Shown here piece by piece: positions 872-33,702 of a DNA stretch of 64,000 bases. Every line of letters begins with the position of its first letter. Position 1 is the stretch's first letter. The notes below the pieces were generated by a model. The model ran no database searches, had not been told where the DNA came from, and saw only the letters and a program-made list of their open reading frames with translations. Made by a program: the position numbers and the translations under genes. The stretch spans positions 62,001-126,000 of the IMG/VR virus record IMGVR_UViG_3300020172_006270. One strand, 5' to 3'.

Positions 872-2095
872 TTACTCGTTTGTCATCATGCCCATCTTGG
901 GGAGGAATACTTCCAAAGGCAAGGTTTCCTGATCGCCCGAAGTTGATCTCATTTGCTTGAGAGTCACAGTCCTTGCGGTCTTTTCTTTTTCTCCCAAGAT
1001 GACCATATACGGTACTTTTTTCTCATACCCGATGGCAATCTTTTGTTGTAGCGTCCGATTCGAGTGATCGCATTCACACCGAATCCCTTGAGCGAGCAAG
1101 GCTTCTTTGACTTCGTTGGCGTAATCAGCAACCTTGTCGCTGATTGGTGCAATAGTAACACCGACCGGAGCCAACCACATTGGTAAATTCCCATCAGTGT
1201 GTTCTAACAGCACACCGATGAAACGCTCGAAGCTGCCATATATCGCTCGGTGAATAACAATCGGAGTTTGTTCTTTGTCTTCCTTGTCGGTGTAAGTGCA
1301 ACCGAATCGCTGCGGCAATTGGAAGTCTAACTGGATAGTAGCAGTTTGCCATTCACGACCCAGGGAGTCAGTTACAATGAAGTCGATTTTCGGTCCATAA
1401 AAAGCACCGTCTTTATGAGCCACGTCAAACTTCAAATTATTTTCACACAAGGCGTCTTCAAGGCTTGCTTCAGCATTATCCCAAGTCAATATATCGCCCA
1501 TGAAGTTATCGGGACGAGTGCTGAGTACGGATCGGAACTTCATTCCGAACCAGCCGTATACTCTGCCGATCATAATGAGAATTCGCTTGATCTCGCTTTG
1601 CAGGTTGTCCGGCGAAACGAAAATATGGGCATCATCTTGGCAGAACGCACGACAACGAGTAAGTCCACCCAAGGCACCGGAAACCTCGTTTCGATGCAAT
1701 GGGCCATACTCGGCGAACCGCACGGGCAAATCTCGATAGCTCCACTGCTTTGAGCGGAATATCTCCATATGCCCAGGGCAGTTCATTGGCTTCAAACAAC
1801 AATCTTCATGTTCTTCGTCTTGCTTCTCGCCAGTTGGCTTATCGCTGACGAAGAACATATTTTTCGCATAGTGGTCCAGATGCCCGCTGGTTGCATAAAG
1901 TTCGGACTTCCAGACGAGTGGGGTCCGAACTTCTTGGCAACCATTGGCTTCATTGAGTTGGCGAATGCGATTCAGCAATGATTGATAAAGGACAACTCCC
2001 TTCGGAAGCCAAATCGGACAGCCCGGAGATAGAGGGCTGAACATGAAGAGGTCTAGTTTCTGGCCGATTGCTCGGTGGTCCCGGTTGTTGTCCAT
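872..2095 (-). CDS. thrS: threonyl-tRNA synthetase, catalytic core plus anticodon-binding domain only
   Basis: DHRAIGQKLDLF, KPMNCPGH, HRNEVSGALGGLTR, QDDAH, GAFYGPKID, TIQLDF, IHRAIYGSFERF motifs; starts at the catalytic core. Confidence 0.97.
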   Translation of the reverse strand: MDNNRDHRAIGQKLDLFMFSPLSPGCPIWLPKGVVLYQSLLNRIRQLNEANGCQEVRTPLVWKSELYATSGHLDHYAKNMFFVSDKPTGEKQDEEHEDCCLKPMNCPGHMEIFRSKQWSYRDLPVRFAEYGPLHRNEVSGALGGLTRCRAFCQDDAHIFVSPDNLQSEIKRILIMIGRVYGWFGMKFRSVLSTRPDNFMGDILTWDNAEASLEDALCENNLKFDVAHKDGAFYGPKIDFIVTDSLGREWQTATIQLDFQLPQRFGCTYTDKEDKEQTPIVIHRAIYGSFERFIGVLLEHTDGNLPMWLAPVGVTIAPISDKVADYANEVKEALLAQGIRCECDHSNRTLQQKIAIGYEKKVPYMVILGEKEKTARTVTLKQMRSTSGDQETLPLEVFLPKMGMMTNE

Positions 2096-8444: not shown

Positions 8445-9590
8445 CTAATTCCCGTATTTTGGCCGAACACCGAAAATGTGCGGTATGAATCGACTCATGT
8501 TCCCCGTCACAAGGGTCTTGTCTTCTCGAATGCCGATTCCACATGCCCAGCCATTGACCATCCAACTCCCAATGCAGGCGTGGTTGCCGTCGAACTTGGG
8601 TAATTCCCAAAGATGCTGATATACACACGGGCCATCATAAGGACCATCAGTTTTGAGCAGCAATTCTCCATGCTCAAATATTTGCACATTAGCACCCTCA
8701 CGACTCAGAATAGGCTTCTGAACGTAAGGCTTATTGCGAAGCGGTTGGAATGATGCTTCCAACAGGTTCGGATGATCTGGAAACAACTCCCACAGCACAG
8801 GCAAGATTGCCTTATTGCTCAAGAGTGCCTTCCAAGGAGCCTCAAGCCATTTGCTTGTTTTGAGGAACAGCTTTTTGCCGAACTCATCAGTCTGCATCCA
8901 TTCCCACGGATACAGCTTGAAGCAGGTTTGAATGGGATTTTCATTCAGGTCGGTAAATGTACGGCGACCTTCGTTCCACCCAATGTTCTCAATGTCAATA
9001 TATTCCGTCTCCCAGCCAGCTTGGATGGCGGTATCACGGAGATAATTGACGTTCATGTAGTCTTCGAGATTGCCAGCAAGTGCTGTGAAGTACAACACTC
9101 CTGGCGTTACGGCTCTCAGTTCTTTCCACACTTCGATCAGTCGTTCGTGGATTGAGTTGAACTGGTTGCGATTCGGGAATTTGTCTTTGGCCCAATACCA
9201 TTGGGTTACAGCGGCTTCGATTAGGCCGGTTGGCGTATCAGCGTTATATTCCAACATTTTGGGTTGGGTTTTTCCGTCGTAGGAAAAATCAAACCGACCA
9301 TAAATGGTGTGTTCATCGTGTTCCCAACTGTCACGAATGAACTGATGGAATTCAGGCGGGATCAAGAAGGCATCGAAGAGATTATTGTCGATGACGTGTT
9401 GGACGGCCTCAAGACAACGATCATTCAGTTCGTAAGACGCCGCTTCGAGGGTGTTTATCTCGGCAGCATCAAATTCGTAGTATGCCGATTCATCCCAATA
9501 AATATCACCATCGAATGTATGAAACAACATGCCTTGACCTTCGACGGTCTTCTTCCAGTCGGGCCGAAGATCAGTTATATGGCGTTTCAT
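8445..9590 (-). CDS. glutathionylspermidine-synthase-family ATP-grasp ligase (YgiC/YjfC-like)
   Basis: YWDESAYY, YGRFDF, LEYNADTPT, FNSIHERLI, FKLYPWEWM, KPILSREGANV, GIGIRED. Confidence 0.93.
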   Translation of the reverse strand: MKRHITDLRPDWKKTVEGQGMLFHTFDGDIYWDESAYYEFDAAEINTLEAASYELNDRCLEAVQHVIDNNLFDAFLIPPEFHQFIRDSWEHDEHTIYGRFDFSYDGKTQPKMLEYNADTPTGLIEAAVTQWYWAKDKFPNRNQFNSIHERLIEVWKELRAVTPGVLYFTALAGNLEDYMNVNYLRDTAIQAGWETEYIDIENIGWNEGRRTFTDLNENPIQTCFKLYPWEWMQTDEFGKKLFLKTSKWLEAPWKALLSNKAILPVLWELFPDHPNLLEASFQPLRNKPYVQKPILSREGANVQIFEHGELLLKTDGPYDGPCVYQHLWELPKFDGNHACIGSWMVNGWACGIGIREDKTLVTGNMSRFIPHIFGVRPKYGN

Positions 9591-11535: not shown

Positions 11536-11949
11536 TCACAAGGTTTTCCAATTCCCGTCCGATTCCCTTTTCAGGTAAATCACTTCCACGCCTAATGGTT
11601 TTTCTTCTTTTTTGTCGAGTTCCAACTCAGGCCAGATTCGCTTCATGATCTTAGCCCAAATGAAATACAACACCAAGGTCAGGATAACGAAGTCAATCAT
11701 GGTTCCAATAAGACGGCCCACTTCTAGGTTCATCCCAGGAAAAGGATGTGCCACCCATGTTCTCCAATCGCCGCCAGTGCCAACCACTAAGTAATTGACA
11801 AATGGCATGATGAGATAATCGGATATGCCAGATACAGCCTTTTGAAATGCTGTGGCAAGTATCAGGCCGATAGCGACTCCCAGCATATTGCGATTGAAGG
11901 CGAAGTTTTTGTATTCTTGGAACTCTTTGTTTGGATCAATAGGTATCAT
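11536..11949 (-). CDS. mscL: MscL-family mechanosensitive channel
   Basis: EYKNFAFNRNMLGVAIGLILATAFQKAVSGISDYLIMP matches the MscL S1/TM1 pattern; second TM helix present. Confidence 0.8.
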   Translation of the reverse strand: MIPIDPNKEFQEYKNFAFNRNMLGVAIGLILATAFQKAVSGISDYLIMPFVNYLVVGTGGDWRTWVAHPFPGMNLEVGRLIGTMIDFVILTLVLYFIWAKIMKRIWPELELDKKEEKPLGVEVIYLKRESDGNWKTL

Positions 11950-12555
11950 TTATTTGGGTGCTGCCTTACGAAATTTAGTTGCCAACTCATTGTATATTGG
12001 TTTGTATTTTTCTTCATAGTATGCCCACTCGTATTGTGGGTTGTGAAGAATATCAAACCAATAATGATTGGCGGCTGCGTAATCGTGGATTGCTCCCGTC
12101 TCGGCGATCTGAGCGCCAAAGTTTAGGATGCGAAGTGAGTGGAATAGGCTTTTCCAACCGATGTAGAAGTCCTTCTCTTTGTCGATCTTCTTTTTGGCTT
12201 TGACGAACGACTTAGAGGATTTCTCGCTGAGGGTGCTTCGCAATAACTTCAAGTTGATCTTGAGACGGAAGTGATTGCGACAGATTCCATCTGGAAGGAA
12301 GTAAGCCTCCAACGTATGAATCTTGTGGTCGTTTAGTTGATGTTGCCAATCTTTGTGATTGTATATGTGAATGTTCGTATCGCCGTGGCGATACTCTTCA
12401 CCAGTTTCAATTTTGCTTTGTTCGAGGATGACTGCCAAATAGTCGTGATCTGACTTTTCGCTGGCTGTCCCGTACACTCGACTCCCATAGGGGAATAGCA
12501 AAACGGCCTGATCTCTCAGGCCATAAGTTGCTTTGAATTGCTCAGTGCCGTTCAT
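11950..12555 (-). CDS. pol-beta-family nucleotidyltransferase
   Basis: YGSRVYGTASEKSDHD motif; helical C-terminus KSLFHSLRIL. Confidence 0.85.
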   Translation of the reverse strand: MNGTEQFKATYGLRDQAVLLFPYGSRVYGTASEKSDHDYLAVILEQSKIETGEEYRHGDTNIHIYNHKDWQHQLNDHKIHTLEAYFLPDGICRNHFRLKINLKLLRSTLSEKSSKSFVKAKKKIDKEKDFYIGWKSLFHSLRILNFGAQIAETGAIHDYAAANHYWFDILHNPQYEWAYYEEKYKPIYNELATKFRKAAPK

Positions 12556-13073
12556 GGGTCACTCGTTTCGTATAGCTTCAGCCAATATTCATCTGACGTG
12601 AACTCTTGTTGTTTGAGTTCATCATCTTCTTTGAAGCAATCGGGTGCCTTTAGAACTTTCTCAGTGAGATCAATACGTTCGGTGTGGCGACCGCCTAAGT
12701 GAGAGGCTTCGTAATAGACGCCCTTCTTGGTCACGTCTTCTACCAAGAGTGGTTCATCTTGGCCGACGTACATTTCATGGTCGTAATTATCGAACAACCA
12801 AAAACTGTCGCCTTCTTGAAGCTCGCTGGCGGGGATCAAAAATCGGCGTTGAGCCGCTTCGATTTTTTCCTTGGCCGATAAGACCTTTTCGCCTTTGTCG
12901 CTATATCCGTGGACTTCATATCCACCATTCGACATTTTGGCGTTCAGGTCCAACAGCTTACGCACGAGGGGTTCGGCTTCTGTTTTGATGCTTTCCCAAT
13001 GATCTGGCAAGTTCTTCTCGCCAACCATCATTTCAAACATCATGCGACCGTAATCGCCAACAGAAACTTCCAT
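12552..13073 (-). CDS. hypothetical protein
   Basis: MEVSVGDY..., starts just after the tRNA-Leu 3' end. Confidence 0.7.
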   Translation of the reverse strand: MEVSVGDYGRMMFEMMVGEKNLPDHWESIKTEAEPLVRKLLDLNAKMSNGGYEVHGYSDKGEKVLSAKEKIEAAQRRFLIPASELQEGDSFWLFDNYDHEMYVGQDEPLLVEDVTKKGVYYEASHLGGRHTERIDLTEKVLKAPDCFKEDDELKQQEFTSDEYWLKLYETSDP

Positions 13074-13075
13074 AG

Positions 13076-13159
13076 TGACCTCGGTGGGACTTGAACCCAC
13101 ACGTCCTTTCGGACACAAGTTCCTAAGACTTGAGCGTATGCCAATTTCGCCACGAGGCC
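13076..13159 (-). tRNA. tRNA-Leu(TAG), long variable arm
   Basis: cloverleaf, CAAGT-CTTAGGA-ACTTG, GGTTCAAGTCC, A73. Confidence 0.95.
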
Positions 13160-13203
13160 GTTATTTTGCGCATGAGTTCGCCAAATTTTCGTGTTCGCCA
13201 TAC

Positions 13204-13232
13204 ATTTTACCACGTTTTCGGCATCTTGTAAA
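13204..13232 (-). promoter_or_regulatory. sigma70-type phage promoter
   Basis: TTTACA-17nt-TAAAAT with CGTGG. Confidence 0.7.
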
Positions 13233-13235
13233 ACG

Positions 13236-13317
13236 TAGCCCTGGCGGGACTCGAACCCGCAATCCTTTCGGCGACAGATTTTAAGTCTGTTGTGTATACC
13301 AATTCCACCACAGGGCC
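13236..13317 (-). tRNA. tRNA-Leu(TAA), long variable arm
   Basis: ACAGA-CTTAAAA-TCTGT, GGTTCGAGTCC. Confidence 0.95.
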
Positions 13318-15004: not shown

Positions 15005-15724
15005 TTATATATCACTGGACAAATCTAATGCAATTCCCCACTCTCGGTTTTTATTGGCAACGTAATTTCTAGTAGTTTTCGCCTTATCCAATATTTCAGC
15101 GTTGATCCGCTGGGTTTCTTTGATGTTTTTGTTGCGAAAATTCCTTGCTCGTTCTTTTTCGTTGTGGTCAATTGCTCGGCAAAAACGGAGCGGCGTCTCT
15201 GCGTATTTCAATTTGTTGTGCATTGCTGCACGAAATTCAAAGTCTATATCATCCCAGCCCCAGCCTACGTTCATATCTTCGTTGTAGCCATTGACGCTAT
15301 AGAAGTGTTCTCGACGGACGGCGATTTTCCCACAACTGCCAGACATATTGAACATATCAAATACGGGAGCAGTCATGATGCGATCTTTATTCTGCATGAC
15401 TTCTTGGATCAACTGAACAAAGCCGTCGATCAAGAAATTGTCGGCGTCTAAATTGCAAAGAATATCGCCGGTCGCTTGGCGATGAGCAATGTTTTTGGCG
15501 TGAGATGCCTGAAAGTGTTCGGGAAGCTGAGTTCGATAGTATTTGACGGTTCCACGCTCGATCCAGGGCCGGATATTGTCACGGACCCATTCGTGCATTC
15601 CGTCTTTGCTGCCATAATTAAGCAGCACAAACTCGCAATCTGGTGCGACATGAAGGTTTATGGGCAGGGTTCTCATTAGATGATGAACCCTGCCCATGCA
15701 AGTTGTGCAAAATGATATTTTCAA
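15005..15724 (-). CDS. GT-A glycosyltransferase (GT2/GT7-like)
   Basis: NLDAD, VNGYNEDM..GWGWDD. Confidence 0.88.
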   Translation of the reverse strand: MKISFCTTCMGRVHHLMRTLPINLHVAPDCEFVLLNYGSKDGMHEWVRDNIRPWIERGTVKYYRTQLPEHFQASHAKNIAHRQATGDILCNLDADNFLIDGFVQLIQEVMQNKDRIMTAPVFDMFNMSGSCGKIAVRREHFYSVNGYNEDMNVGWGWDDIDFEFRAAMHNKLKYAETPLRFCRAIDHNEKERARNFRNKNIKETQRINAEILDKAKTTRNYVANKNREWGIALDLSSDI

Positions 15725-15725
15725 A

Positions 15726-16376
15726 TTAGCCCTTCAAGAACAAGGCCATGAATCCTCTTGATAGTGGCGAATCATAATATCCAGTACACCGAGGATGTTT
15801 GGCCAAAGCGAAAATCTTTTCTCTATATTCGCTTTGAGTTTGTGGGCTTGTCCAATCAGGAGCGGAGTCAGACCGATATGGCGAAGTATCGTGAAATACT
15901 GCAAGTTTACGCAGCGTTCCTTTGTTGAGCATAATCTCGCATTCGAGGGGTCTGATCTCAGTCAGACTATCGAAGAATCCAATATCGAATACCATATTGG
16001 ATTGTTGTAAGAATTCAAGAGAATCAACGCAATGTACTTCAGCCCATTTAAGCAAGTGTTCTTCTTCAAGAACGGTTTGCAATCGAACGCATTGGGGTGG
16101 CAGAACTTCGAGAGAATGAACCTTGCCGAAGCCATTGAGTTTGCACGCATGAGCCAGAGCAGTTGTACCGAAGCCTTCCCAGGCACCAGTTTCCAAAACC
16201 AAGTCGGGCTTCAATACTCGAATGGTTGAGTGCAGCCAATTGAGGACTTCATATTCTGTTGAGCCGCCATCGGCTACTTCAAATAAGTCTGCACGTTCCG
16301 CTGCGATGTGTGGGTGAACATCGCATTCTCTAAGAATGGGACTCCAAGCTGGTTTCCAAGTATAATCTCGTTCCAC
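15726..16376 (-). CDS. class I SAM-dependent methyltransferase
   Basis: VLETGAWEG, GFFDS, VFHDT; paralogue of the next gene. Confidence 0.85.
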   Translation of the reverse strand: MERDYTWKPAWSPILRECDVHPHIAAERADLFEVADGGSTEYEVLNWLHSTIRVLKPDLVLETGAWEGFGTTALAHACKLNGFGKVHSLEVLPPQCVRLQTVLEEEHLLKWAEVHCVDSLEFLQQSNMVFDIGFFDSLTEIRPLECEIMLNKGTLRKLAVFHDTSPYRSDSAPDWTSPQTQSEYREKIFALAKHPRCTGYYDSPLSRGFMALFLKG

Positions 16377-16377
16377 T

Positions 16378-17019
16378 TCAACCCCTTAAAAACAAAGCAA
16401 TAAATCCTCTGGATAAAGTCCACTCAAAGTAGCCAGTGCAAAGAGGATTTTTTGCCATGTCGAATATTTTGTTTCTGAATGTGTCTTGTTCTTCTTTGGT
16501 AGTATACACTGTGGTTCGAGTTGCGGCTGTGTCGTGAAACACTGCTATTTTTTTGATTATTCCACGACGCATACAAATCATGCCTTCGTCGGCTTTGATT
16601 TCAATCAAAGTATCGAAGAACCCAATATCAAATATTAGATCGGTTTCTTCTAAAAACTTCATTGAATCGCATTCGTGAACCTCAGCCCATTCACTTAACC
16701 CCTCGTCAGCAAGTCGTTGTCGAACTTGTGCGCAAGTCTCCGGGTTATGTTCAAGAGAGTGAACTTTGCCAAATCCATTTAGCTTGCAGGCGTGAGCCAA
16801 AGCAATTGTCCCCATGCCCTCCCAGGCACCAGTTTCCAAAACCACTTCAGGTTTCATGACCCTAACGGTTGCATGGAGCCAATTCAGAACTTCAAATTCG
16901 GTAGAGCTAGGATCAGCAACATCGAACAAATGTGCTTTTTCACAGGCATCATGCAGATGAATATCAGCTTCGATTTGCAATGGAGTCCATGCAGGCTTCC
17001 AAGTGTAGTCTTTTTCCAT
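16378..17019 (-). CDS. class I SAM-dependent methyltransferase
   Basis: VLETGAWEG, GFFDT, VFHDT; tandem duplicate. Confidence 0.85.
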   Translation of the reverse strand: MEKDYTWKPAWTPLQIEADIHLHDACEKAHLFDVADPSSTEFEVLNWLHATVRVMKPEVVLETGAWEGMGTIALAHACKLNGFGKVHSLEHNPETCAQVRQRLADEGLSEWAEVHECDSMKFLEETDLIFDIGFFDTLIEIKADEGMICMRRGIIKKIAVFHDTAATRTTVYTTKEEQDTFRNKIFDMAKNPLCTGYFEWTLSRGFIALFLRG

Positions 17020-18408: not shown

Positions 18409-19581
18409 TTACAGCAGTTCCGTCACGACGCCTGAGCCAATCGTCATACCGCCCTCTCGGATAGCGAAATGACTGCCTTTTTCAATGGCAATCGGCTTAT
18501 CCAGGGTGATAAACAGGCAAGTGTTCTCGCCCGGCATAACCAATTCGATTCCTTCCGGCATTTCAACAAGGCCGGTGACGTTAGTGGTTCGGAAGAAGAA
18601 CTGCGGCTTATAACCGTTGAAGATCGGGGTGTGACGCCCGCCCTCATCCTTGCCCAAGACGTAAATTTCACTCTTGAACTTGGTGTGAGGTTTGATACTT
18701 CGTGGTTGTGCCACAACCTGTCCACGCTCCACCTGATCGGCTTTGATGCCTCTCAGCAGCAACCCGACGTTCTGACCAGCTTCGCCAAATTCCAATTGCT
18801 TGTTGAAGGCTTCGACGCTGGTGACAACCGATTCCAGAATGTCTCCCAGGCCCAAGATTTCAACTTTGGTTCCGACCGTGACGGTTCCTTGCTCGATCTT
18901 GCCCGTGACTACACAGCCACGACCTTCGATGTTGTGAACGCCCTCGATAGGCATCAAGAAAGGACGGTCAATAGAACGGCTGGGGTCAGGGATATAAGAA
19001 TCCAGAGCCGCCATCAGTTCTACGATGCACTTGCTTGCTGCGGGATCGGCAGGGTTATCCAGAGCGGGCTTTGCGGCCCCACGGATAAAGGGAGTCTTCT
19101 CACCATCGAAGCCATACTTCGTCAGCAAGTCTCTCGTTTCCATCTCGACCAGTTCGAGCAATTCCTTATCCTGAACCAGATCACACTTATTGAGGAACAC
19201 GACAATATCCGGCACGCCCACCTGACGAGCGAGCAGAATATGCTCTTTCGTCTGAGGCATAGGACCGTCTGCTGCATTGACGAGCAATACAGCGCCGTCC
19301 ATTTGAGCGGCCCCGGTAATCATGTTCTTCACATAGTCGGCGTGACCAGGGCAGTCGATGTGAGCATAGTGACGGGTATCCGTCTCATACTCAACGTGCG
19401 ACGTGGTGATCGTTACCGTTTTGGTAACGTCACGAACGGTGCCGCCCTTGGCGATGTCGCCGTATGCTTTCTTTTTTGCGAAACCCTTTTCGGCCTGAAC
19501 AGCGAGAATAGCTGCGGTCAGGGTCGTCTTCCCGTGGTCAATGTGACCAATCGTTCCGACATTGATGTGGACTTTCTTCAC
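18409..19581 (-). CDS. tuf: elongation factor Tu
   Basis: [54 protein letters not shown]; GTG start after AGGAG. Confidence 0.98.
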
Positions 19582-19705
19582 TTTACTTTCTCCTGTGATC
19601 TTTACGATAGATCACTGTTGGAGGTTTTGATCTCTATATCCCCACTACAGAATAGTGTTTCTACTCACAACGAGTAAGAGCCAAGGCATCCAGAAATCGA
19701 AACAG

Positions 19706-19789
19706 TGCCGCTCCCCGGACTTGAACCGGGACGCCGGTAAAGGCATCAGATTTTGAGTCTGACGTGTCTGCCAATTCCACCAGAGCGGC
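19706..19789 (-). tRNA. tRNA-Leu(CAA), long variable arm
   Basis: TCAGA-CTCAAAA-TCTGA. Confidence 0.95.
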
Positions 19790-19802
19790 ATAAACAAAAC
19801 AG

Positions 19803-19877
19803 TGACGGGTGTGGGACTCGAACCCACAAAACCATGATTTTAAGTCACGGATGTCTGCCTAGTTGCATCAACCCGCC
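19803..19877 (-). tRNA. tRNA-Leu(TAA), short variable loop
   Basis: CGTGA-CTTAAAA-TCATG, variable region GTTTT. Confidence 0.88.
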
Positions 19878-19883
19878 ATACAG

Positions 19884-19960
19884 TGCCAGCGGTGGGACTC
19901 GAACCCACAAAACCCCGGCTCTCGACCGGAGATGTCTACCATAGGTTGCATCACGCTGGC
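19884..19960 (-). tRNA. tRNA-Leu(GAG), short variable loop, C33
   Basis: TCCGG-TCGAGAG-CCGGG, variable region GTTTT. Confidence 0.82.
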
Positions 19961-19992
19961 ATATAGTGCCGGATCGCTCCAGCACTAATCTC

Positions 19993-20295
19993 TTAATCCT
20001 CACCACGCAACTCTTTGAGTTGTTCGTTGTAGTCCACGTCAGACTTCAATTCGTGATTGTGCTTTGACCGCTTTGGATACTTGTCGCTATGACAGATGCC
20101 GCACTGCGGATTGCCACAATCGAAAGCGTCTTTCTTACGGAATCGACCCTTCTGTTCATCACATTCACAGTCAACAACATATGCGCTGACGCCAATGCGA
20201 TTTCTTGTCCAGGTTTTGTTGCTCTCAACGTGAGAGCGCCGGTGTTTCTTCCACTCACGCAGAGTGATCTTGTAATCCTCGTGCCACCGCTTCAT
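19993..20295 (-). CDS. small basic Cys-containing hypothetical protein
   Basis: RBS GGAGG; CGNPQCGICH. Confidence 0.75.
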   Translation of the reverse strand: MKRWHEDYKITLREWKKHRRSHVESNKTWTRNRIGVSAYVVDCECDEQKGRFRKKDAFDCGNPQCGICHSDKYPKRSKHNHELKSDVDYNEQLKELRGED

Positions 20296-20376
20296 CGTTC
20301 CCTCCATAATGGGTTTGGGTAATAGGCTCGATGAAGCCGATGATTTGCGTGTGGTGAGTGTTCATGTTTATTCTCT

Positions 20377-20829
20377 CTAGTTAAGGAAGCAACAGTCCGG
20401 GTTGGGACACCAATCTCCGAACTCTTCGGATTGGGTGTCAGAAATCAATCGTGTGTAACAGCAACGGCAATGTCCTTTGACCCACCATGCTGGGCCGAAC
20501 CATCGAAAGCCGCCACGAGTTGTTTCGTAGTAGCATCCAATTCGTTCTAGCCAATCCATAATAGTGTGGGCGATCATTCGCCGTTCAGCATCACGCCATG
20601 AGTAAGGAAATTCATGCCACTCATAGCCATGACCACTTTCTCGGTATTGATGATCTCGACCGAGATACTTCCATGATTTTTGCTTGCGAACAAACTGATC
20701 GTCCCATGCCGTGGGAAGGTTTCGTCTCTTCCCACGGACATAGGGATCATTGCGGTCTTGGTTCGCTCTTATTTCTTGTGTTGTTCTCGGATACCGAAGG
20801 CACGTCGAGAACCATCTTTTCTTTGCCAT
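20377..20829 (-). CDS. basic hypothetical protein
   Basis: RBS AGGAG; RYPRTTQE..RGKRRNLPTAWDD; C-terminal Cys cluster. Confidence 0.75.
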   Translation of the reverse strand: MAKKRWFSTCLRYPRTTQEIRANQDRNDPYVRGKRRNLPTAWDDQFVRKQKSWKYLGRDHQYRESGHGYEWHEFPYSWRDAERRMIAHTIMDWLERIGCYYETTRGGFRWFGPAWWVKGHCRCCYTRLISDTQSEEFGDWCPNPDCCFLN

Positions 20830-20858
20830 GTAGCGTTTCTCCTAAGTGCGGAATGCAC

Positions 20859-20894
20859 TTAAAAGACGCTACCCAGCCTTTCGTGAATTTTCAT
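20859..20894 (-). CDS. putative 11-aa leader peptide MKIHERLGSVF
   Basis: AGGA RBS; stop codon lies in a hairpin that sequesters the RBS of the 20829 gene. Confidence 0.5.
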   Translation of the reverse strand: MKIHERLGSVF

Positions 20895-21028
20895 ACGAGT
20901 CCTTTTACTTTGTTCTTTCAAATATGTGGACTGTCGAATCCTTGACAGTTTTACTTACCGATCATAGGCGATCCTATCGCTACCGGGGTCAGCCTCATGT
21001 TCATCCTGAACATCAGCGTCCACTTCCA

Positions 21029-21541
21029 TCAACCCGTCCAAATTTCTTCTTTTCCAGTCGGCGGGTCATTCAATCTCTTCAAAAATTTACCTGTATATTT
21101 ATGGTCTTCGGGGTTCAAACCCTTCCGCAAATACCGCACATCTGGTGTTACTTCTCGTTCCGAATACTGATATTCAATGCCCAGCCGAGTGTGTTTGATG
21201 ATTTTCTTTTCTTTATCCACCCATTCGTATTCACGAGCCTGATCGACAACTACAGTGCCTTTCATGCCTTCGATGTCGATGTCATATTCGTGCATGTTCT
21301 GGATTTCAATTTCGTCTTCTTCAACCAACGCCCAACAAGGATAGCTGTACCGTTTAGGCGGTGGGTTTTCATGGATCGGTCCACCCATCAACATTCGTCG
21401 CAAGAGAGCCGAGTGGCCAACATCAGCCGAACTTGAACCTCGTTTATTGTCTTCGCAGATATTCATCCACTGGCAAACCATCTTGCAAGCGAACTCACAC
21501 TGCTCACGAGTCAACGATGTAACTTTTTCTTCGTCCATCAT
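21029..21541 (-). CDS. hypothetical protein
   Basis: RBS GGAG; lies between tRNA blocks. Confidence 0.75.
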   Translation of the reverse strand: MMDEEKVTSLTREQCEFACKMVCQWMNICEDNKRGSSSADVGHSALLRRMLMGGPIHENPPPKRYSYPCWALVEEDEIEIQNMHEYDIDIEGMKGTVVVDQAREYEWVDKEKKIIKHTRLGIEYQYSEREVTPDVRYLRKGLNPEDHKYTGKFLKRLNDPPTGKEEIWTG

Positions 21542-21555
21542 ATTCTCCAACAAAG

Positions 21556-21632
21556 TACCCAGGACGGGACTCGAACCCGTAAAACCGATATTTTGAGTAT
21601 CGGATGTCTACCGAAGGTTGCATCACCTGGGC
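21556..21632 (-). tRNA. tRNA-Leu(CAA), short variable loop
   Basis: CGATA-CTCAAAA-TATCG, variable region GTTTT. Confidence 0.88.
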
Positions 21633-21669
21633 ATATTCTACCAAATCTCGTCTTGGCTGTACAGCCAAG

Positions 21670-21757
21670 TGGACAGCGACGGAATCGAACCGCTCCGGCA
21701 CCCACCCTACTTTTTTAATGCCAACGGATTTACAGTCCGCCGTAAGGAACGCTATCC
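21670..21757 (-). tRNA. tRNA-Tyr(GTA)-like, no D-arm, enlarged variable arm
   Basis: acceptor GGATAGC/GCTGTCC-A, GCGGA-CTGTAAA-TCCGT, GGTTCGATTCC. Confidence 0.78.
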
Positions 21758-21814
21758 ATGTTTTCCTAAAAACAGGTGTTTTCCCACATAGGAAAACATG
21801 CGTTTTTAGGAAAG

Positions 21815-21888
21815 TCGCTCCGGTGGGACTCGAACCCACAGCATCCCTGGTTCTAAGCCAAGGTGGTCTGCCAATTGCCTACAGAGCG
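21815..21888 (-). tRNA. tRNA-Leu(TAG), short variable loop
   Basis: CTTGG-CTTAGAA-CCAGG, variable region GATGC. Confidence 0.88.
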
Positions 21889-21894
21889 TTCAAG

Positions 21895-21966
21895 TGGACT
21901 GTGAGGCGCTCGAATCCTCGTCTCAGCGTTTTCAGCGCTGCGCTACACCATCTCAGCTAACAGTCC
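21895..21966 (-). tRNA. tRNA-Phe(GAA), atypical T-arm
   Basis: CAGCG-CTGAAAA-CGCTG. Confidence 0.82.
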
Positions 21967-21974
21967 ATATACAG

Positions 21975-22058
21975 TGTCCGAGGGGAGAGTCGAACTCCCA
22001 CGCCTTTTACGGCACAAGGCCCTCAACCTTGCGTGTCTACCAATTTCACCACTCGGAC
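21975..22058 (-). tRNA. tRNA-Leu(GAG), long variable arm
   Basis: CAAGG-TTGAGGG-CCTTG. Confidence 0.95.
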
Positions 22059-22070
22059 AAAACAAATCAG

Positions 22071-22145
22071 TGGGCTGTCTCAGAGTCGAACTGAGTTCTC
22101 ATGTTCTTCAGACATGCGCTGAATGACCGCACTAGCTCACAGCCC
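22071..22145 (-). tRNA. tRNA-Phe(GAA)
   Basis: CATGT-CTGAAGA-ACATG. Confidence 0.88.
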
Positions 22146-22154
22146 AATATTCAA

Positions 22155-22334
22155 TTATTCTTTTGTTGCTTCTTCAAGTTCCCTGATGCAATCTCGCAAT
22201 GATATTGTTCGTCCATGCTGGACGCCCATTGCAGTCAATGGGTTCATATCTTTTGCGACATTAGGATTCTCTTGAAATCGCTTCAATCGTTCTTTCCATT
22301 TTTGAATCAATTCTTGTATATTTGTTTCTTGCAT
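22155..22334 (-). CDS. hypothetical small protein
   Basis: RBS AAGGA, MQETNIQELI. Confidence 0.65.
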   Translation of the reverse strand: MQETNIQELIQKWKERLKRFQENPNVAKDMNPLTAMGVQHGRTISLRDCIRELEEATKE

Positions 22335-22350
22335 ATTTAATCCTTCCAAG

Positions 22351-22434
22351 TCTCCGGGGGGAGAGTCGAACTCCCACGCCTTTTACGGCACAAGATTCTG
22401 AGTCTTGCGTGTCTACCAATTCCACCACCCGGAG
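22351..22434 (-). tRNA. tRNA-Leu(CAG), long variable arm
   Basis: CAAGA-CTCAGAA-TCTTG. Confidence 0.95.
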
Positions 22435-22441
22435 ATAAAAG

Positions 22442-22530
22442 CGGAAGTCAAGGGAATTGAACCCTTACCGGATATTTCACCGGGCCTGTTTTCAAGACAG
22501 GTGCAACAAACCAATATTTGCCTAACTTCC
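22442..22530 (-). tRNA. tRNA-Ser(TGA)
   Basis: CCTGT-CTTGAAA-ACAGG, long arm, G73. Confidence 0.92.
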
Positions 22531-22555
22531 ATATTGTGTCAACAACTTTGACATA

Positions 22556-22627
22556 GAGGATACACCGGCTTCGACACCGGATATGTCCCGTTTCTAGCAG
22601 GATGAGTTACATTTCTCCATGTACTCC
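22556..22627 (-). tRNA. degenerate tRNA-like element, anticodon AGA (Ser)
   Basis: GGAGTACA/TGTATCC bulged acceptor, GAG/CTC D-stem, TCCTG-CTAGAAA-CGGGA, aberrant T-loop. Confidence 0.5.
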
Positions 22628-22646
22628 ATATCGCATTTGACACAAG

Positions 22647-22733
22647 CGGAAGCCAAGGGAATTGAACCCTCACCGGGATTAACCGGGCCTGTTTTCGAGA
22701 CAGGTGCAACAAACCAGTATTTGCCTAGCTTCC
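22647..22733 (-). tRNA. tRNA-Ser(CGA)
   Basis: CCTGT-CTCGAAA-ACAGG. Confidence 0.92.
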
Positions 22734-22746
22734 ATAAAACAACAAG

Positions 22747-22836
22747 CGGAGGACAAGGGAATCGAACCCTCACCGGGTATTTCACCGGATCGGTTTAGCA
22801 AACCGACGTAGCAACACCACCATCTACCTATCCTCC
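22747..22836 (-). tRNA. tRNA-Ser(GCT)
   Basis: TCGGT-TTGCTAA-ACCGA. Confidence 0.92.
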
Positions 22837-22842
22837 ATTCAG

Positions 22843-22931
22843 CGGAAGCCAAGGGAATTGAACCCTCACCGGATATTTCACCGGACCCGCTTTCCAGGCG
22901 AGCGCAACAAACCAGTATTTGCCTAGCTTCC
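22843..22931 (-). tRNA. tRNA-Ser(GGA)
   Basis: CTCGC-CTGGAAA-GCGGG. Confidence 0.92.
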
Positions 22932-22987
22932 GTGTAATGCACTATACTTTGAACATTAACCAGGGCTAATGTTCATTCTATCGTACA

Positions 22988-23287
22988 TTATGCTTCAACC
23001 TTCACCAACTTGCCAAAGATACAGTTCCGGCCAACCCAGCCATTGATATGGCCTTTGTTGTTGCCGATCTGGAATCGGTCGCCTTGTATTGCTTTGATTA
23101 AGTGCAGGTATTGTTTGCCTGCAACTTTGCACAATACAATGTCGCCCGTATCCAAAACGCCAGTCACCGGCTCGACAGTGCATAACTGTCCTGATTCGAT
23201 CTTCCCGACCATTGAGTTGCCTCGTGGTCGAAACGAAACCGTCTCACCTGTTTGGAGTTTCGCTATGTAACCAGTCGCCCATCCCAT
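22988..23287 (-). CDS. S24/S26 peptidase-like protein
   Basis: RPRGNSM, GDIVLC, YLHLIK. Confidence 0.75.
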   Translation of the reverse strand: MGWATGYIAKLQTGETVSFRPRGNSMVGKIESGQLCTVEPVTGVLDTGDIVLCKVAGKQYLHLIKAIQGDRFQIGNNKGHINGWVGRNCIFGKLVKVEA

Positions 23288-23301
23288 AGTAATTCTCCAA
23301 G

Positions 23302-23385
23302 TGCATCCGGCAGGAATCGAACCTGCATGTCCCGAAGGAGGCTGGGTTACAGCCAGCTAGACCCACCACACTGTCTAACGGATGC
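23302..23385 (-). tRNA. tRNA-Tyr(GTA)
   Basis: GCTGG-CTGTAAC-CCAGC, long arm, atypical D-arm. Confidence 0.9.
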
Positions 23386-23395
23386 GTATGCCAAT

Positions 23396-23448
23396 AAAAA
23401 AACCCCCGGCAACTTTTTCCATCTTCTGGAGAAAGCTGCCGGGGGTTT
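23396..23448 (-). terminator. attenuator terminator directly upstream of the tRNA array
   Basis: CCCCCGGCAGC...GUUGCCGGGGG followed by U7. Confidence 0.9.
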
Positions 23449-23471
23449 GTATTTCCCCACAATTGTCCCGT

Positions 23472-32052: not shown

Positions 32053-33702
32053 ATGTGCAAGTATTTAATTGTCGTCGGTGGTGTGATCTCAGGAACGGGG
32101 AAGGGCGTCTCAGCAGCGAGTGTTGGCCTTTTGTTGAAGTTTCGTGGCCATAATATCACCCTTGTAAAATTTGACCCGTATCTGAACACCAATGCCGGAA
32201 TTCTGGCTCCCCGTGAACACGGGGAGTGTTTTCTCTGCGATGATGGCACGGAAACTGACCTCGATCTCGGCCACTATGAGCGTATTGCTGGCATCAATGT
32301 CAACAAGATGAATATTTGCACGTCCGGGACGTTGCACAAGGAGTTGATCGAGGAGCAGGAATCAGGCAAATACCTCGGCCAAACCATTCAGCTTATTCCC
32401 CATTTGACGGATAAAATCCAACAACGTCTGGTGGATTTGGGCAAAGATAAAGATGTCGTTATTGTTGAGATTGGTGGCACTGTTGGCGATAGCGAGAGTT
32501 TCGCCTTCTTTGAAGCCATGCGACAATTCAAACAGAAGTTCAAAGACGACGTATTGATCGCTATGGTCGCTCCCATTCTGTGGGTGAATACGATCAAGGA
32601 ATTCAAGACAAAGCCCCTCCAAAACAGCGTGAAAGAGCTTCAGCGGCATGGCTTGCAGCCCGATGTGATTTTCTGCCGTGTAGATCGAGCCATCCCAGAG
32701 AAGTTGTTGGCCAAAGTCTCAATGCTCACCAACGTAAAGCGTGAGTGCATTTTCGACGCTCCAGACGTTCAGAGCATTTATCAAGTTCCGCTGGAGTTCT
32801 ATGATCGGCACGTTGACGATCTTTTCGTTGACCTTTTCCGATTGAATCGGAGCGCTTGCCGCATTCACAAATATCGTGAAGTTGTAGAAAAATACGTTGC
32901 TAACCATATGCCAGCTATCGAGATCGGTGTATTTGGCAAGTACGACAATTGCGACGAAGCGTATATGTCCCTGAAGGAATCTTTGATTCACGCCGGTATT
33001 GCCAATGATGTTCGTGTAAACATCAAATGGATCAGGGCTGATGAATTGGAGAAATATAAAGACCTTCGAGGTATTCATAAGCATTTTGAGGGCTTGGATG
33101 GCATCGTTGTCCCCGGTGGCTTCGACAATCGAGGTACTGAGGGCAAGATTAAAGCTATTCAATACGTTCGTGAGAAGAAGATTCCGTTCTTGGGTATTTG
33201 CCTGGGCCTCCAGTGTGCAGTTATTGAATTCGCCCGAAATGAGTGCGATTTAGACGGAGCCAATAGCCTTGAATTTAACAAGGAAACTCCGTATCCGGTC
33301 ATTCACTTCGTTGAAGGGCAAGAAAAGCTGAACAAAAAATCAGCCAATATGCGATTGGGGTCGTATGAGTGTGAATTGACCAAGGATAGTATTGCCGCCG
33401 AAGTTTATGGCAAGCCTCTTATTAGCGAACGCCATCGCCACCGATATGAAGTCAATCCAGAGTTTGCCGATCAATATGCCAAGCGTGGATTGAAGATTAG
33501 CGGTCGAAATCCTGATTCTGGACTCATTGAAATGATGGAATTGGATCGCAATATCCATCCTTATTTCATTGGCACCCAAGCTCACCCGGAATTCAAAAGC
33601 AGGCTAATGAACGCCGCTCCGTTGTTCCGTGGGCTGATTGCGGCAGCAGTTCAGCACCGAGGATTGAAACTTCAGCCAGAGATTCCCGTAGAGTCTCAGT
33701 GA
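32053..33702 (+). CDS. pyrG: CTP synthase
   Basis: GGVISGTGKG, KFDPYLN, DLDLGHYER, GICLGLQ, ERHRHRYE, QAHPEF. Confidence 0.97.
   Translation: MCKYLIVVGGVISGTGKGVSAASVGLLLKFRGHNITLVKFDPYLNTNAGILAPREHGECFLCDDGTETDLDLGHYERIAGINVNKMNICTSGTLHKELIEEQESGKYLGQTIQLIPHLTDKIQQRLVDLGKDKDVVIVEIGGTVGDSESFAFFEAMRQFKQKFKDDVLIAMVAPILWVNTIKEFKTKPLQNSVKELQRHGLQPDVIFCRVDRAIPEKLLAKVSMLTNVKRECIFDAPDVQSIYQVPLEFYDRHVDDLFVDLFRLNRSACRIHKYREVVEKYVANHMPAIEIGVFGKYDNCDEAYMSLKESLIHAGIANDVRVNIKWIRADELEKYKDLRGIHKHFEGLDGIVVPGGFDNRGTEGKIKAIQYVREKKIPFLGICLGLQCAVIEFARNECDLDGANSLEFNKETPYPVIHFVEGQEKLNKKSANMRLGSYECELTKDSIAAEVYGKPLISERHRHRYEVNPEFADQYAKRGLKISGRNPDSGLIEMMELDRNIHPYFIGTQAHPEFKSRLMNAAPLFRGLIAAAVQHRGLKLQPEIPVESQ

What the first reader, a model, noticed from the sequence alone, without database searches (positions are those of the whole stretch)
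19706..23385. tRNA set restricted to Leu, Ser, Tyr and Phe
Seen: 16 tRNA(-like) genes in the array (7 Leu, 5 Ser, 2 Tyr, 2 Phe) plus 2 more Leu at 13076-13317, none with encoded CCA. Established: Leu, Ser and Tyr are the bacterial long-variable-arm (class II) tRNAs. Inference: the set looks like a response to a host activity that targets a structural class of tRNA, not like codon-usage optimisation.
Basis: partly seen in the sequence, partly recalled or inferred. Interest (0 to 1): 0.75.

Follow-up and report, generated by a model that had tools for sequence, protein, structure and literature searches.

The report
Huge-phage tRNA island with own EF-Tu
This is one of two tRNA gene islands of a very large virus that infects Planctomycetota bacteria; it holds only Leu, Ser, Tyr and Phe tRNAs plus the virus's own copy of elongation factor Tu, an arrangement conserved among relatives and not explained by codon usage, but nothing yet shows that it answers a host attack on one structural class of tRNA.

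Summary
The array holds 12 solid tRNA genes, 2 well-supported ones and 2 decayed ones. Two more tRNA-Leu lie 6 kb away. All are Leu, Ser, Tyr or Phe, and none encodes CCA.

- A full EF-Tu gene ends the array, giving an operon-like unit of about 5 kb.
- Four of the nine Leu genes lack the long variable arm, so they are not class II.
- The 223 kb contig is only about half of a ~0.5 Mb phage genome.
- Diverged relatives keep the same Leu/Ser/Tyr/Phe-plus-EF-Tu island, apart from a second island with tRNAs for the other 16 amino acids.

In this contig the second island is missing at its syntenic site.

The EF-Tu and the short-arm tRNA-Leu are of Planctomycetota type, so the host is a planctomycete. 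Host chromosomes have similar Leu–Tyr tRNA operons. Codon bias does not explain the set. No tRNA-repair genes or clear nuclease-escape changes were found.

Verdict: a lineage-conserved translation island of a huge phage. The general kind is known. The split by tRNA class and the EF-Tu with an altered amino-acid pocket are new details. The counter-defence idea is untested.

The parts
13075..13159 (-). tRNA-Leu(UAG), type II (85 nt), outlying pair
   Evidence: ARAGORN; Rfam 52.5 bits
13235..13317 (-). tRNA-Leu(UAA), type II (83 nt), outlying pair
   Evidence: ARAGORN; Rfam 61.4 bits
18372..18401 (.). 13-bp hairpin directly after the EF-Tu stop codon; likely end of the transcription unit
18409..19581 (-). 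Elongation factor Tu, 390 aa. Belongs to a phage-associated clade nested in Planctomycetota tuf. Pocket motif is EGVH instead of EDVF (D217G, F219H).
   Evidence: Pfam three domains; TIGR00485 601 bits; tree and motifs
19705..19789 (-). tRNA-Leu(CAA), type II
19802..19877 (-). tRNA-Leu(UAA), type I (76 nt, 4-nt variable loop)
19883..19960 (-). tRNA-Leu(GAG), type I, with C33 in the anticodon loop
   Evidence: Rfam 35.5 bits; the same C33 loop recurs in L005, L007 and L034
19993..20307 (-). 104-aa Cys-rich ORF inside the array, function unknown
   Evidence: Conserved in L001-L003, L006 (71%) and L008 (52%); no family hit
20377..20829 (-). 150-aa ORF that also recurs inside tRNA arrays of relatives, function unknown
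   Evidence: 61% identical to an ORF inside G002 cluster B; phrog_12793, unknown function
21029..21538 (-). 169-aa ORF inside the array, function unknown
21555..21632 (-). tRNA-Leu(CAA), type I; missed by ARAGORN and Rfam
   Evidence: 73-77% identical to 19802-19877 and 19883-19960; fits the covarying cloverleaf; R1 79.6 bits (it was in the training set)
21670..21758 (-). Decayed tRNA-Tyr-like element (GUA loop, no proper D arm)
   Evidence: tRNA-Sec model 31.4 bits, below cut-off; not the homolog of the L002 tRNA-Tyr
21814..21888 (-). tRNA-Leu(UAG), type I (75 nt)
   Evidence: close copies in host arrays L192 and L196
21894..21966 (-). tRNA-Phe(GAA)
21974..22058 (-). tRNA-Leu(GAG), type II
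22070..22145 (-). tRNA-Phe(GAA), second copy, with G37
22350..22434 (-). tRNA-Leu(CAG), type II, A37; 87% identical to the Leu(GAG) gene
22441..22530 (-). tRNA-Ser(UGA)
22556..22626 (-). Decayed tRNA-Ser-like remnant
   Evidence: R1 18 bits; read by eye
22646..22733 (-). tRNA-Ser(CGA)
22746..22836 (-). tRNA-Ser(GCU)
22842..22931 (-). tRNA-Ser(GGA). The four Ser genes are 75-90% identical paralogs.
22988..23287 (-). 99-aa S24-peptidase-like ORF (GNSM motif), conserved within the island
   Evidence: Pfam PF00717 at 22.8 bits, just under the cut-off; 53-80% identical in L006, L007, L009 and L034
23301..23385 (-). tRNA-Tyr(GUA), first gene of the unit
23395..23450 (-). Long hairpin plus T-run immediately upstream of tRNA-Tyr; boundary of the unit
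   Evidence: Read; weak CopA-like Rfam hits there

Best explanation
What it is. The stretch is the class-II-tRNA island of a huge phage (about 0.45-0.5 Mb) that infects Planctomycetota. A minus-strand unit of about 5 kb runs from tRNA-Tyr (23385) to the EF-Tu stop (18409) and is bracketed by hairpins. Two more tRNA-Leu genes lie 6 kb downstream. Together they encode:
- a complete type II Leu set (UAA, CAA, UAG, GAG, CAG);
- a second, host-style type I Leu set (UAA, CAA, UAG, GAG);
- all four Ser anticodons, tRNA-Tyr and two tRNA-Phe;
- the phage lineage's own EF-Tu.

How it most likely works (inferred).
1. The unit is transcribed like a bacterial tRNA-tufB operon.
2. Host RNases trim the tRNAs and the host CCA-adding enzyme completes the 3' ends.
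3. Host LeuRS, SerRS, TyrRS and PheRS charge them. Discriminator bases and long arms are canonical, and planctomycete LeuRS already serves a type I tRNA-Leu.
4. The phage EF-Tu adds delivery capacity.

Translation of the 16 codons for these four amino acids, about 22% of phage codons, then no longer depends on the host's single-copy tRNA genes.

Why only these four amino acids. The make-up is inherited organisation. The lineage keeps its tRNA genes in two islands, and this contig carries only this one. The island grew by local duplication and anticodon switching, which is easy for Leu and Ser because their synthetases ignore the anticodon. It also resembles host Leu-Tyr and tRNA-tuf operons. 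It is not codon compensation. Why the lineage separates this class, and here seems to keep it preferentially, is not shown.
For: Phage identity and host:
- Tail sheath, RNR, SbcCD.
- The EF-Tu clade nests in Planctomycetota tuf.
- Type I tRNA-Leu is native to Planctomycetota. It is the only Leu-UAA gene in G009 and G101.

Fragment status:
- CheckV estimates 46% completeness.
- The contig is collinear with about 222 kb of the complete 533 kb relative G003.

Conserved island:
- Ten loci with EF-Tu 67-98% identical have only Leu, Ser, Tyr and Phe tRNAs around it.
- Two-island partition in G002 and G003: Fisher p = 1.7e-14 and 8.5e-12.

Growth by duplication:
- Ser paralogs are 75-90% identical to each other but 67-75% to host tRNA-Ser.
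- Leu-GAG and Leu-CAG are 87% identical.
- 19 of 20 pairs of the type I Leu cloverleaf show compensatory changes.

Host precedents: Leu-Leu-Leu-Tyr operons and paired Ser genes, and the tRNA-Thr-Tyr-Gly-Thr-tuf-tRNA-Trp context.

Unit boundaries.

Not codon bias.

Kind already known: PMC7162821 reports tRNAs, synthetases and EF-Tu in huge phages.

Charging precedent: one LeuRS charges both tRNA-Leu types in Streptomyces, PMC6614811.

Possible expression: an RNA-library contig spans two adjacent tRNA-Ser genes of a ~96% identical relative, while the neighbouring genes are uncovered.
Against: - Inheritance does not explain why the lineage sorted its tRNAs by class in the first place, nor why class I tRNA-Phe always travels with the class II genes.
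- At the site where G002 and G003 carry the second island, this contig has 10.6 kb without any tRNA. The class II island may therefore be preferentially retained, which hints at a specific function that this explanation leaves open.
- Other planctomycete-associated arrays are mixed, not partitioned (G076, G021).
- In relative G001 the EF-Tu sits in the other island, so EF-Tu and Leu/Ser/Tyr/Phe are not strictly coupled.
- Transcription as one unit, processing and charging are all inferred.
Confidence: 0.6

Rival explanations
1. Counter-defence. Planctomycete hosts, or competing elements, carry a tRNase or tRNA-modifying toxin that recognises long-variable-arm tRNAs. Alternatively, the phage itself destroys them for host shut-off. 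The island replaces the lost Leu, Ser and Tyr tRNAs.
For: - Complete isoacceptor sets rather than selected codons.
- The island is conserved, and here apparently retained while the other island is missing at its site.
- An extra armless Leu series exists for the one class II amino acid whose synthetase can do without the arm.
- Recurrent loop differences from the host sample: A37 in 8 of 8 phage type II Leu-CAG genes against G37 in the host, and C38 in half of the phage Tyr genes.
- Phage tRNAs are known to neutralise tRNA-cleaving defences (PMC10264068, PMC11555353 and PMC11464382, listed).
Against: - No tRNase of that specificity is known in these hosts, and none was sought here.
- Phe is class I yet always present.
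- The armless Leu form is native to the host, so it is not a phage escape invention.
- Long-arm copies are kept alongside it.
- No RNA-repair genes in the contig.
- The bacterial Schlafen paper reports no class II specificity.
- The host sample for the loop comparison is very small.
Confidence: 0.2
2. Assembly artefact. The phage has a full tRNA complement, the rest lies in the unassembled half, and nothing is special about this set beyond gene clustering.
For: - 46% completeness.
- The relatives' second island.
- A ThrRS gene with no tRNA-Thr in the contig.
- The contig covers only G003 coordinates ~301-528 kb.
Against: - The syntenic site of the second island lies inside the contig and holds no tRNA.
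- In G003 the part that has no counterpart here holds only three odd tRNA-like genes.
- Close relatives L002 and L003 also show only Leu and Tyr near EF-Tu.
- Even if true, the class-wise partition itself remains.
Confidence: 0.3
3. Private delivery channel. The pocket-remodelled phage EF-Tu (D217G, F219H) is specialised for aminoacyl-tRNAs of this island (bulky Leu, Phe and Tyr, and Ser), so tRNAs and factor co-evolve as a unit.
For: - The EGVH motif is confined to the phage-associated clade, whereas all canonical tuf genes, including Planctomycetota, have EDVF.
- These residues line the amino-acid pocket, and D217A/G with F219Y/G are the changes used to admit bulky or phosphorylated side chains (PMC6386890 and PMC4150793).
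- The factor lies inside the island in most relatives.
Against: - In G001 the same EF-Tu type sits among Gly, Glu, Lys and Asp tRNAs.
- A stand-alone copy exists in an Aquisphaera chromosome without tRNAs nearby.
- T-stems of the island tRNAs look like the host's.
- No binding data exist.
Confidence: 0.1
4. Codon or amino-acid supply compensation for a 46% GC phage in a GC-rich host.
For: - TTG, TTT, TAT, CTT, TCT, TTA and TCA are among the codons the phage uses more than the proxy host.
- Tyr and Phe are used more by the phage.
Against: - Only 8 of the 26 most over-demanded codons are covered, and the top four are not.
- Six covered codons are under-used by the phage.
- Lys, Asn and Gln show mismatches as large as or larger than Tyr and Phe.
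- The island is the same in relatives with different GC content (G003 52.7% against 45.8% here).
- The true host is unknown, so the test uses a proxy.
Confidence: 0.07

Closest known systems
Translation gene sets of huge phages (Al-Shayeb et al. 2020, PMC7162821)
   Same: A phage of several hundred kb that encodes many tRNAs, an aminoacyl-tRNA synthetase (ThrRS here) and EF-Tu. The paper proposes that these sustain or redirect translation during infection.
   Different: That paper, as far as I read it, does not describe sorting of tRNA genes into a Leu/Ser/Tyr/Phe island and an island for the rest, planctomycete hosts, or an EF-Tu clade with pocket changes.
Bacterial tRNA-tufB operon (thrU-tyrU-glyT-thrT-tufB)
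   Same: tRNA genes directly upstream of tuf on the same strand. Planctomycetota keep this layout, and the phage EF-Tu derives from their tuf.
   Different: The tRNAs here are Leu, Ser, Tyr and Phe, with small ORFs interspersed. Only Tyr is shared.
Anti-defence phage tRNAs (T5 tRNA-Tyr against retron PtuAB, T5 tRNA-Lys against PARIS, mycobacteriophage loop variants)
   Same: Phage-borne tRNA copies whose composition is not explained by codon usage.
   Different: Those cases involve one or a few tRNAs matched to a known nuclease, with resistance-conferring changes. Here there is no known nuclease, whole isoacceptor families are present, and loops are largely canonical.
Type I tRNA-Leu of Streptomyces coelicolor (PMC6614811)
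   Same: [quoted passage not shown]
   Different: - The lineage is Planctomycetota and their phages.
- The native host form is Leu-UAA, with several isoacceptors in some genomes.
- The phages carry up to all five anticodons in type I form.
Engineered EF-Tu variants EF-Sep, EF-pY and Doi's D216A
   Same: Substitutions at the same two pocket positions (D217G; F219 to another ring or a smaller residue).
   Different: The phage variant is natural, keeps H67, E216, T229 and N274, and has His at 219. Its specificity is unknown.

Membership tests
Phage-encoded tRNA gene array | Several genes that fold as tRNA cloverleaves with canonical anticodon loops | tested here: met
   14 ARAGORN genes; 15 Rfam hits above cut-off with permissive filters; covariation for the type I Leu family
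Phage-encoded tRNA gene array | Located in a phage genome | tested here: met
   Tail sheath and other PHROG hits; IMG/VR virus record; synteny with a 533 kb viral genome
Phage-encoded tRNA gene array | tRNAs are expressed and charged during infection | tested here: inconclusive
   One RNA-library contig spans two tRNA-Ser genes of a relative. Charging is not testable here.
Codon-compensating phage tRNAs | The tRNAs match codons that the phage over-uses relative to its host | tested here: not met
   Proxy-host comparison: the top over-used codons are uncovered, and six covered codons are under-used.
Anti-defence (nuclease-evading) phage tRNAs | The host carries a tRNase or toxin acting on the cognate host tRNAs | not tested
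   No search for tRNases in candidate hosts. PADLOC scan of island ORFs found only a weak, uninformative hit.
Anti-defence (nuclease-evading) phage tRNAs | The phage copy differs from the host tRNA at the site of attack | tested here: inconclusive
   Some recurrent differences (A37 in Leu-CAG, C38 in Tyr, C32 in Ser), but the host sample is small and the site of attack is unknown.
Anti-defence (nuclease-evading) phage tRNAs | Loss of the tRNA sensitises the phage to the defence | not testable with these tools
   Needs a cultured phage-host pair.
Elongation factor Tu (TIGR00485) | Three domains and a score above the equivalog cut-off | tested here: met
   601.4 bits against a cut-off of 522.4; Pfam GTP_EFTU, D2 and D3
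Elongation factor Tu (TIGR00485) | Canonical amino-acid pocket residues (E216, D217, F219) | tested here: not met
   E216 is kept; D217G and F219H occur throughout the phage-associated clade.
Bacterial tRNA-tufB operon | tRNA genes upstream of tuf on the same strand in one unit | tested here: met
   Layout and flanking hairpins. Co-transcription is inferred.
Bacterial tRNA-tufB operon | The tRNA set is Thr-Tyr-Gly-Thr | tested here: not met
Type I tRNA-Leu | Leu anticodon, 4-5 nt variable loop, Leu-type D arm, A73 | tested here: met
Type I tRNA-Leu | Leucylated by the resident LeuRS | not testable with these tools
   Inferred from its being the only Leu-UAA gene in G009 and G101 and from the Streptomyces precedent.

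The most novel reading that the evidence does not exclude
Class II tRNAs plus tRNA-Phe are kept as a separate, preferentially retained island together with a pocket-remodelled EF-Tu, because in planctomycete infections these host tRNAs are selectively lost. The cause would be a structure-class-directed tRNase or tRNA toxin, or phage-driven shut-off. The phage EF-Tu would be tuned to deliver the replacement set. This would be a conflict fought over a structural class of tRNA rather than over single anticodons.
Probability: 0.15. Interest if true: 0.85.

Novelty: new variant of a known kind. Interest (0 to 1): 0.5.

Why it matters
Huge phages are already known to carry tRNAs and translation factors, so the general kind is not new. 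Three details are, as far as I could find:
- The tRNA genes are sorted cleanly by structural class across a whole phage lineage.
- A phage-borne EF-Tu clade carries natural changes at the two pocket positions that protein engineers alter to change amino-acid acceptance.
- Planctomycetota and their phages use short-arm (type I) tRNA-Leu, previously documented only in Streptomyces and animal mitochondria.

If the class-wise island turns out to be functional, it would point to an unknown vulnerability or bottleneck of long-arm tRNAs. It would also give a natural test case for EF-Tu specificity. If it is only inherited gene order, the finding is a useful annotation of an under-studied phage group and its host link.

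Tried and rejected
1. Lit-protease escape. The EF-Tu switch I lacks the universal RGITI motif, with KTV at the Lit cleavage site. I rejected this as a phage adaptation. The same switch I is the normal tuf sequence of Planctomycetota and some other phyla.
2. Short-arm tRNA-Leu as a phage invention to escape arm recognition. Rejected: it is native to host chromosomes.
3. Codon bias. Rejected for a proxy host.
4. Phage-encoded helpers. No CCA-adding enzyme, EF-Ts, LeuRS-type synthetase, RtcB, T4 Rnl1 or MiaA was found in the contig. The Rnl1 search had no positive control.
5. The 201-aa nucleotidyltransferase at 11950-12555 as a CCA-adding enzyme. There is no support beyond phrog_388.
6. An integrated relative in host genomes that have phage-like low-GC arrays. 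Only weak (about 30%) tail-sheath hits were found.
7. The genome-contig scan with EF-Tu was swamped by canonical tuf and gave nothing specific.
8. DNA search of the phage collection found only isolated tRNA similarities. EF-Tu hits there were bacterial contamination.
9. The Tyr-like element 21670-21758 is not the homolog of the 91-nt tRNA-Tyr of L002 and L003.
10. Bacterial Schlafen defence as a class II-specific nuclease. The paper reports no such specificity.

Full report
**1. Observation**

ARAGORN finds 14 tRNA genes in the window, all on the minus strand. Two are tRNA-Leu at 13075-13317. Twelve lie between 19705 and 23385. Rfam with permissive filters adds 19883-19960 as a tRNA above its cut-off, and a sub-threshold tRNA-like hit at 21670-21758. 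A third extra gene, 21555-21632, is a clear paralog of the short Leu genes. A Ser-like remnant lies at 22556-22626.

All anticodons are Leu, Ser, Tyr or Phe. Discriminator bases are canonical: A73 for Leu, Tyr and Phe, and G73 for Ser. No gene encodes CCA. These are the only ARAGORN tRNAs in the 223,268-base contig.

**2.

Directly downstream of the last tRNA, on the same strand, lies a complete EF-Tu gene (18409-19581). It has three Pfam domains and scores 601 bits with TIGR00485. A hairpin with a T-run sits just upstream of tRNA-Tyr, and a 13-bp hairpin follows the EF-Tu stop codon. The array and EF-Tu therefore look like one unit of about 5 kb, laid out like the bacterial tRNA-tufB operon.

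Four of the nine Leu-anticodon genes are 75-78 nt long with a 4-5 nt variable loop, so they are type I rather than class II. The window also encodes a ThrRS that lacks the N-terminal part (872-2095).

**3. What the genome is**

The contig has a tail sheath, ribonucleotide reductase and SbcCD. It is an IMG/VR virus record estimated 46% complete. It is collinear with about 222 kb (coordinates ~301-528 kb) of a complete 533 kb relative, G003. The rest of G003 has almost no counterpart here. So the contig is roughly half of a huge phage genome, and 'restricted genome-wide' cannot be claimed outright.

**4. Relatives**

The EF-Tu retrieves viral contigs at 96-98% identity (L001-L003) and 67-74% identity (L004-L011, L034). 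In ten of these loci the tRNAs within 10 kb of EF-Tu are again only Leu, Ser, Tyr and Phe, with both long and short Leu genes. The exceptions are one CUA-anticodon gene and one Val.

In the two large genomes the tRNAs form two separate islands:
- G002 (436 kb): 16 Leu/Ser/Tyr/Phe genes with EF-Tu at 12-32 kb, and 41 genes for the other amino acids at 165-192 kb.
- G003: 14 Leu/Ser/Tyr/Phe genes plus one CUA gene at 473-497 kb, and the others at 0.1-55 kb.

The partition is highly non-random, with Fisher p = 1.7e-14 and 8.5e-12. In fragment G001 the EF-Tu lies in the other island.

In this contig, the genes that flank the second island in G002 and G003 lie only 10.6 kb apart, with no tRNA between them. 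One flank is only 36% identical and the other match is weak. The second island therefore seems absent at its expected place, though it could lie in the missing half.

**5. Host**

The nearest named EF-Tu sequences (75-77% identity) are from Gemmataceae and Isosphaeraceae. I first took the unusual switch I ([13 protein letters not shown] instead of APEE..RGITI) for a phage adaptation. It is in fact the normal tuf sequence of Planctomycetota, in their canonical tRNA-Thr-Tyr-Gly-Thr-tuf-tRNA-Trp context.

In a tree, the phage EF-Tu forms one clade nested within planctomycete tuf. That clade also includes copies on large uncultured contigs and a stand-alone copy in Aquisphaera. Only this clade has EGVH where all canonical tuf genes have EDVF, that is D217G and F219H. 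These residues line the amino-acid pocket. They are the positions changed in engineered EF-Tu variants that accept bulky or phosphorylated residues.

**6. The short tRNA-Leu**

Twenty-seven short Leu genes from the phages fit one cloverleaf, with compensatory changes at 19 of 20 pairs. A model built from them finds 73-79 nt tRNA-Leu genes in planctomycete chromosomes. In G009 (a complete 3.1 Mb chromosome) and in G101, the CAA, UAG, CAG and GAG isoacceptors are long, and the only Leu-UAA gene is the short form.

Some genomes have operons of several type I Leu genes followed by tRNA-Tyr, and paired Ser genes. A precedent exists in Streptomyces coelicolor, where one LeuRS charges both types and E. 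coli LeuRS cannot charge type I. The short form is therefore a host trait that the phages copied and extended to more anticodons.

**7. Tests of the interpretations**

- Codon bias. Against a 67% GC planctomycete segment, only 8 of the 26 most over-demanded codons are covered, and the top four are not. Six covered codons are used less by the phage than by the host. The host is a proxy.
- Growth of the island. The four Ser genes are 75-90% identical to each other but 67-75% to host tRNA-Ser. Leu-GAG and Leu-CAG are 87% identical. This points to duplication and anticodon switching within the phage lineage.
- Counter-defence. No RtcB, Rnl1 (that search had no positive control), CCA-adding enzyme or MiaA was found. 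PADLOC gave only a weak, uninformative hit among the island ORFs. Anticodon loops show some recurrent differences from a small host sample, such as A37 in all phage type II Leu-CAG genes and C38 in half of the Tyr genes. These are not interpretable without knowing a target.
- Expression. The phage occurs in freshwater and sediment metagenomes. One RNA-library contig of a ~96% identical relative spans two adjacent tRNA-Ser genes while the neighbouring genes are uncovered. This is a weak sign of transcription.

**8. Conclusion**

The finding is a real, lineage-conserved island of class II tRNAs, their type I Leu derivatives, tRNA-Phe and a phage-clade EF-Tu, in a huge phage of Planctomycetota.

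The general kind, translation genes in huge phages, is known. The new details are:
- the class-wise partition;
- the apparent retention of this island alone in this lineage;
- the EF-Tu pocket changes;
- the planctomycete type I tRNA-Leu.

The proposed host activity against class II tRNAs remains an untested possibility, which I rate at about 0.2.

Noticed in passing
window 872-2095 (-): Phage ThrRS of 407 aa. It aligns only to positions 170-559 of the 565-position thrS model, so the N-terminal TGS and editing region is missing. The contig has no tRNA-Thr. The overlapping upstream ORF 1950-2771 has no family hit.
   Followed up: partly
window 18409-19581 (-); motif at residues ~213-216: The phage-associated EF-Tu clade has EGVH instead of EDVF (D217G, F219H) in the amino-acid pocket. 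These are the positions altered in the engineered variants EF-Sep and EF-pY. Canonical planctomycete tuf keeps EDVF.
   Followed up: partly
L216 (G009:C1:2736296-2736368), L224 (G101), L228:3550-3912 (G030): Planctomycetota use a type I (short variable loop) tRNA-Leu. It is the only Leu-UAA gene in two genomes. G030 has a chromosomal operon of three type I Leu genes (CAG, UAA, GAG) plus tRNA-Tyr. I found no paper describing this for the phylum.
   Followed up: partly
L210 (G009:C1:1014198-1014280): An 83-nt tRNA-Cys(GCA) with a long variable arm in a planctomycete chromosome. A similar Cys-anticodon variant of a Tyr-like gene lies in G016 (L226:484).
   Followed up: no
window 19883-19960; L005:11659-11734; L007:8629-8705; L034:4567-4643: Type I tRNA-Leu(GAG) with C instead of the near-universal U at position 33 (loop U-C-GAG-A-G). 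It is conserved in four diverged phages while the anticodon stem covaries.
   Followed up: partly
G003 491736 (91 nt, CUA), 121393 and 121467 (CUA); G002 191389 (UCA), 219242 (CUA): The large relatives carry tRNAs with stop-codon-reading anticodons. One of them has a long arm and sits inside the Leu/Ser/Tyr/Phe island. This suggests stop-codon recoding in those phages. No such tRNA occurs in this contig.
   Followed up: no
window 11950-12555 (-) and 12552-13118 (-): A 201-aa Pol-beta-type nucleotidyltransferase (phrog_388, E = 1e-15) and a 188-aa ORF lie just downstream of the two outlying tRNA-Leu genes. The larger ORF's reading frame overlaps the tRNA at 13075. Function unknown.
   Followed up: partly
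window 8445-9590 (-), 11536-11949 (-), 15005-17019 (-), 32053-33702 (+): Auxiliary genes near the island: a glutathionylspermidine-synthase-like protein, an MscL channel homolog, a glycosyltransferase, two paralogous methyltransferases and a CTP synthase. The CTP synthase is 67% identical to a gene of the 595 kb uncultured phage LR756511.1.
   Followed up: no
window 22657-22870: In RNA-library run X15 a 215-nt contig (8 differences, 3 gaps) spans tRNA-Ser(CGA), the spacer and tRNA-Ser(GCU), while EF-Tu and the ORFs have almost no coverage. It may be a dicistronic precursor from a related phage.
   Followed up: partly
L229 (G076:C1:4903975-4905560) and L196 (G098): A 46% GC array of 15 mixed tRNAs lies in two planctomycete chromosomes. 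Its type I Leu(UAG) closely resembles window 21814-21888. It may be a remnant of a related element. No close phage structural genes were found in these genomes.
   Followed up: partly
G002 95839 and 195520: Two long (88 and 81 nt) tRNA-like genes that ARAGORN reads as Phe(AAA), outside or at the edge of the islands. Their nature is unclear.
   Followed up: no
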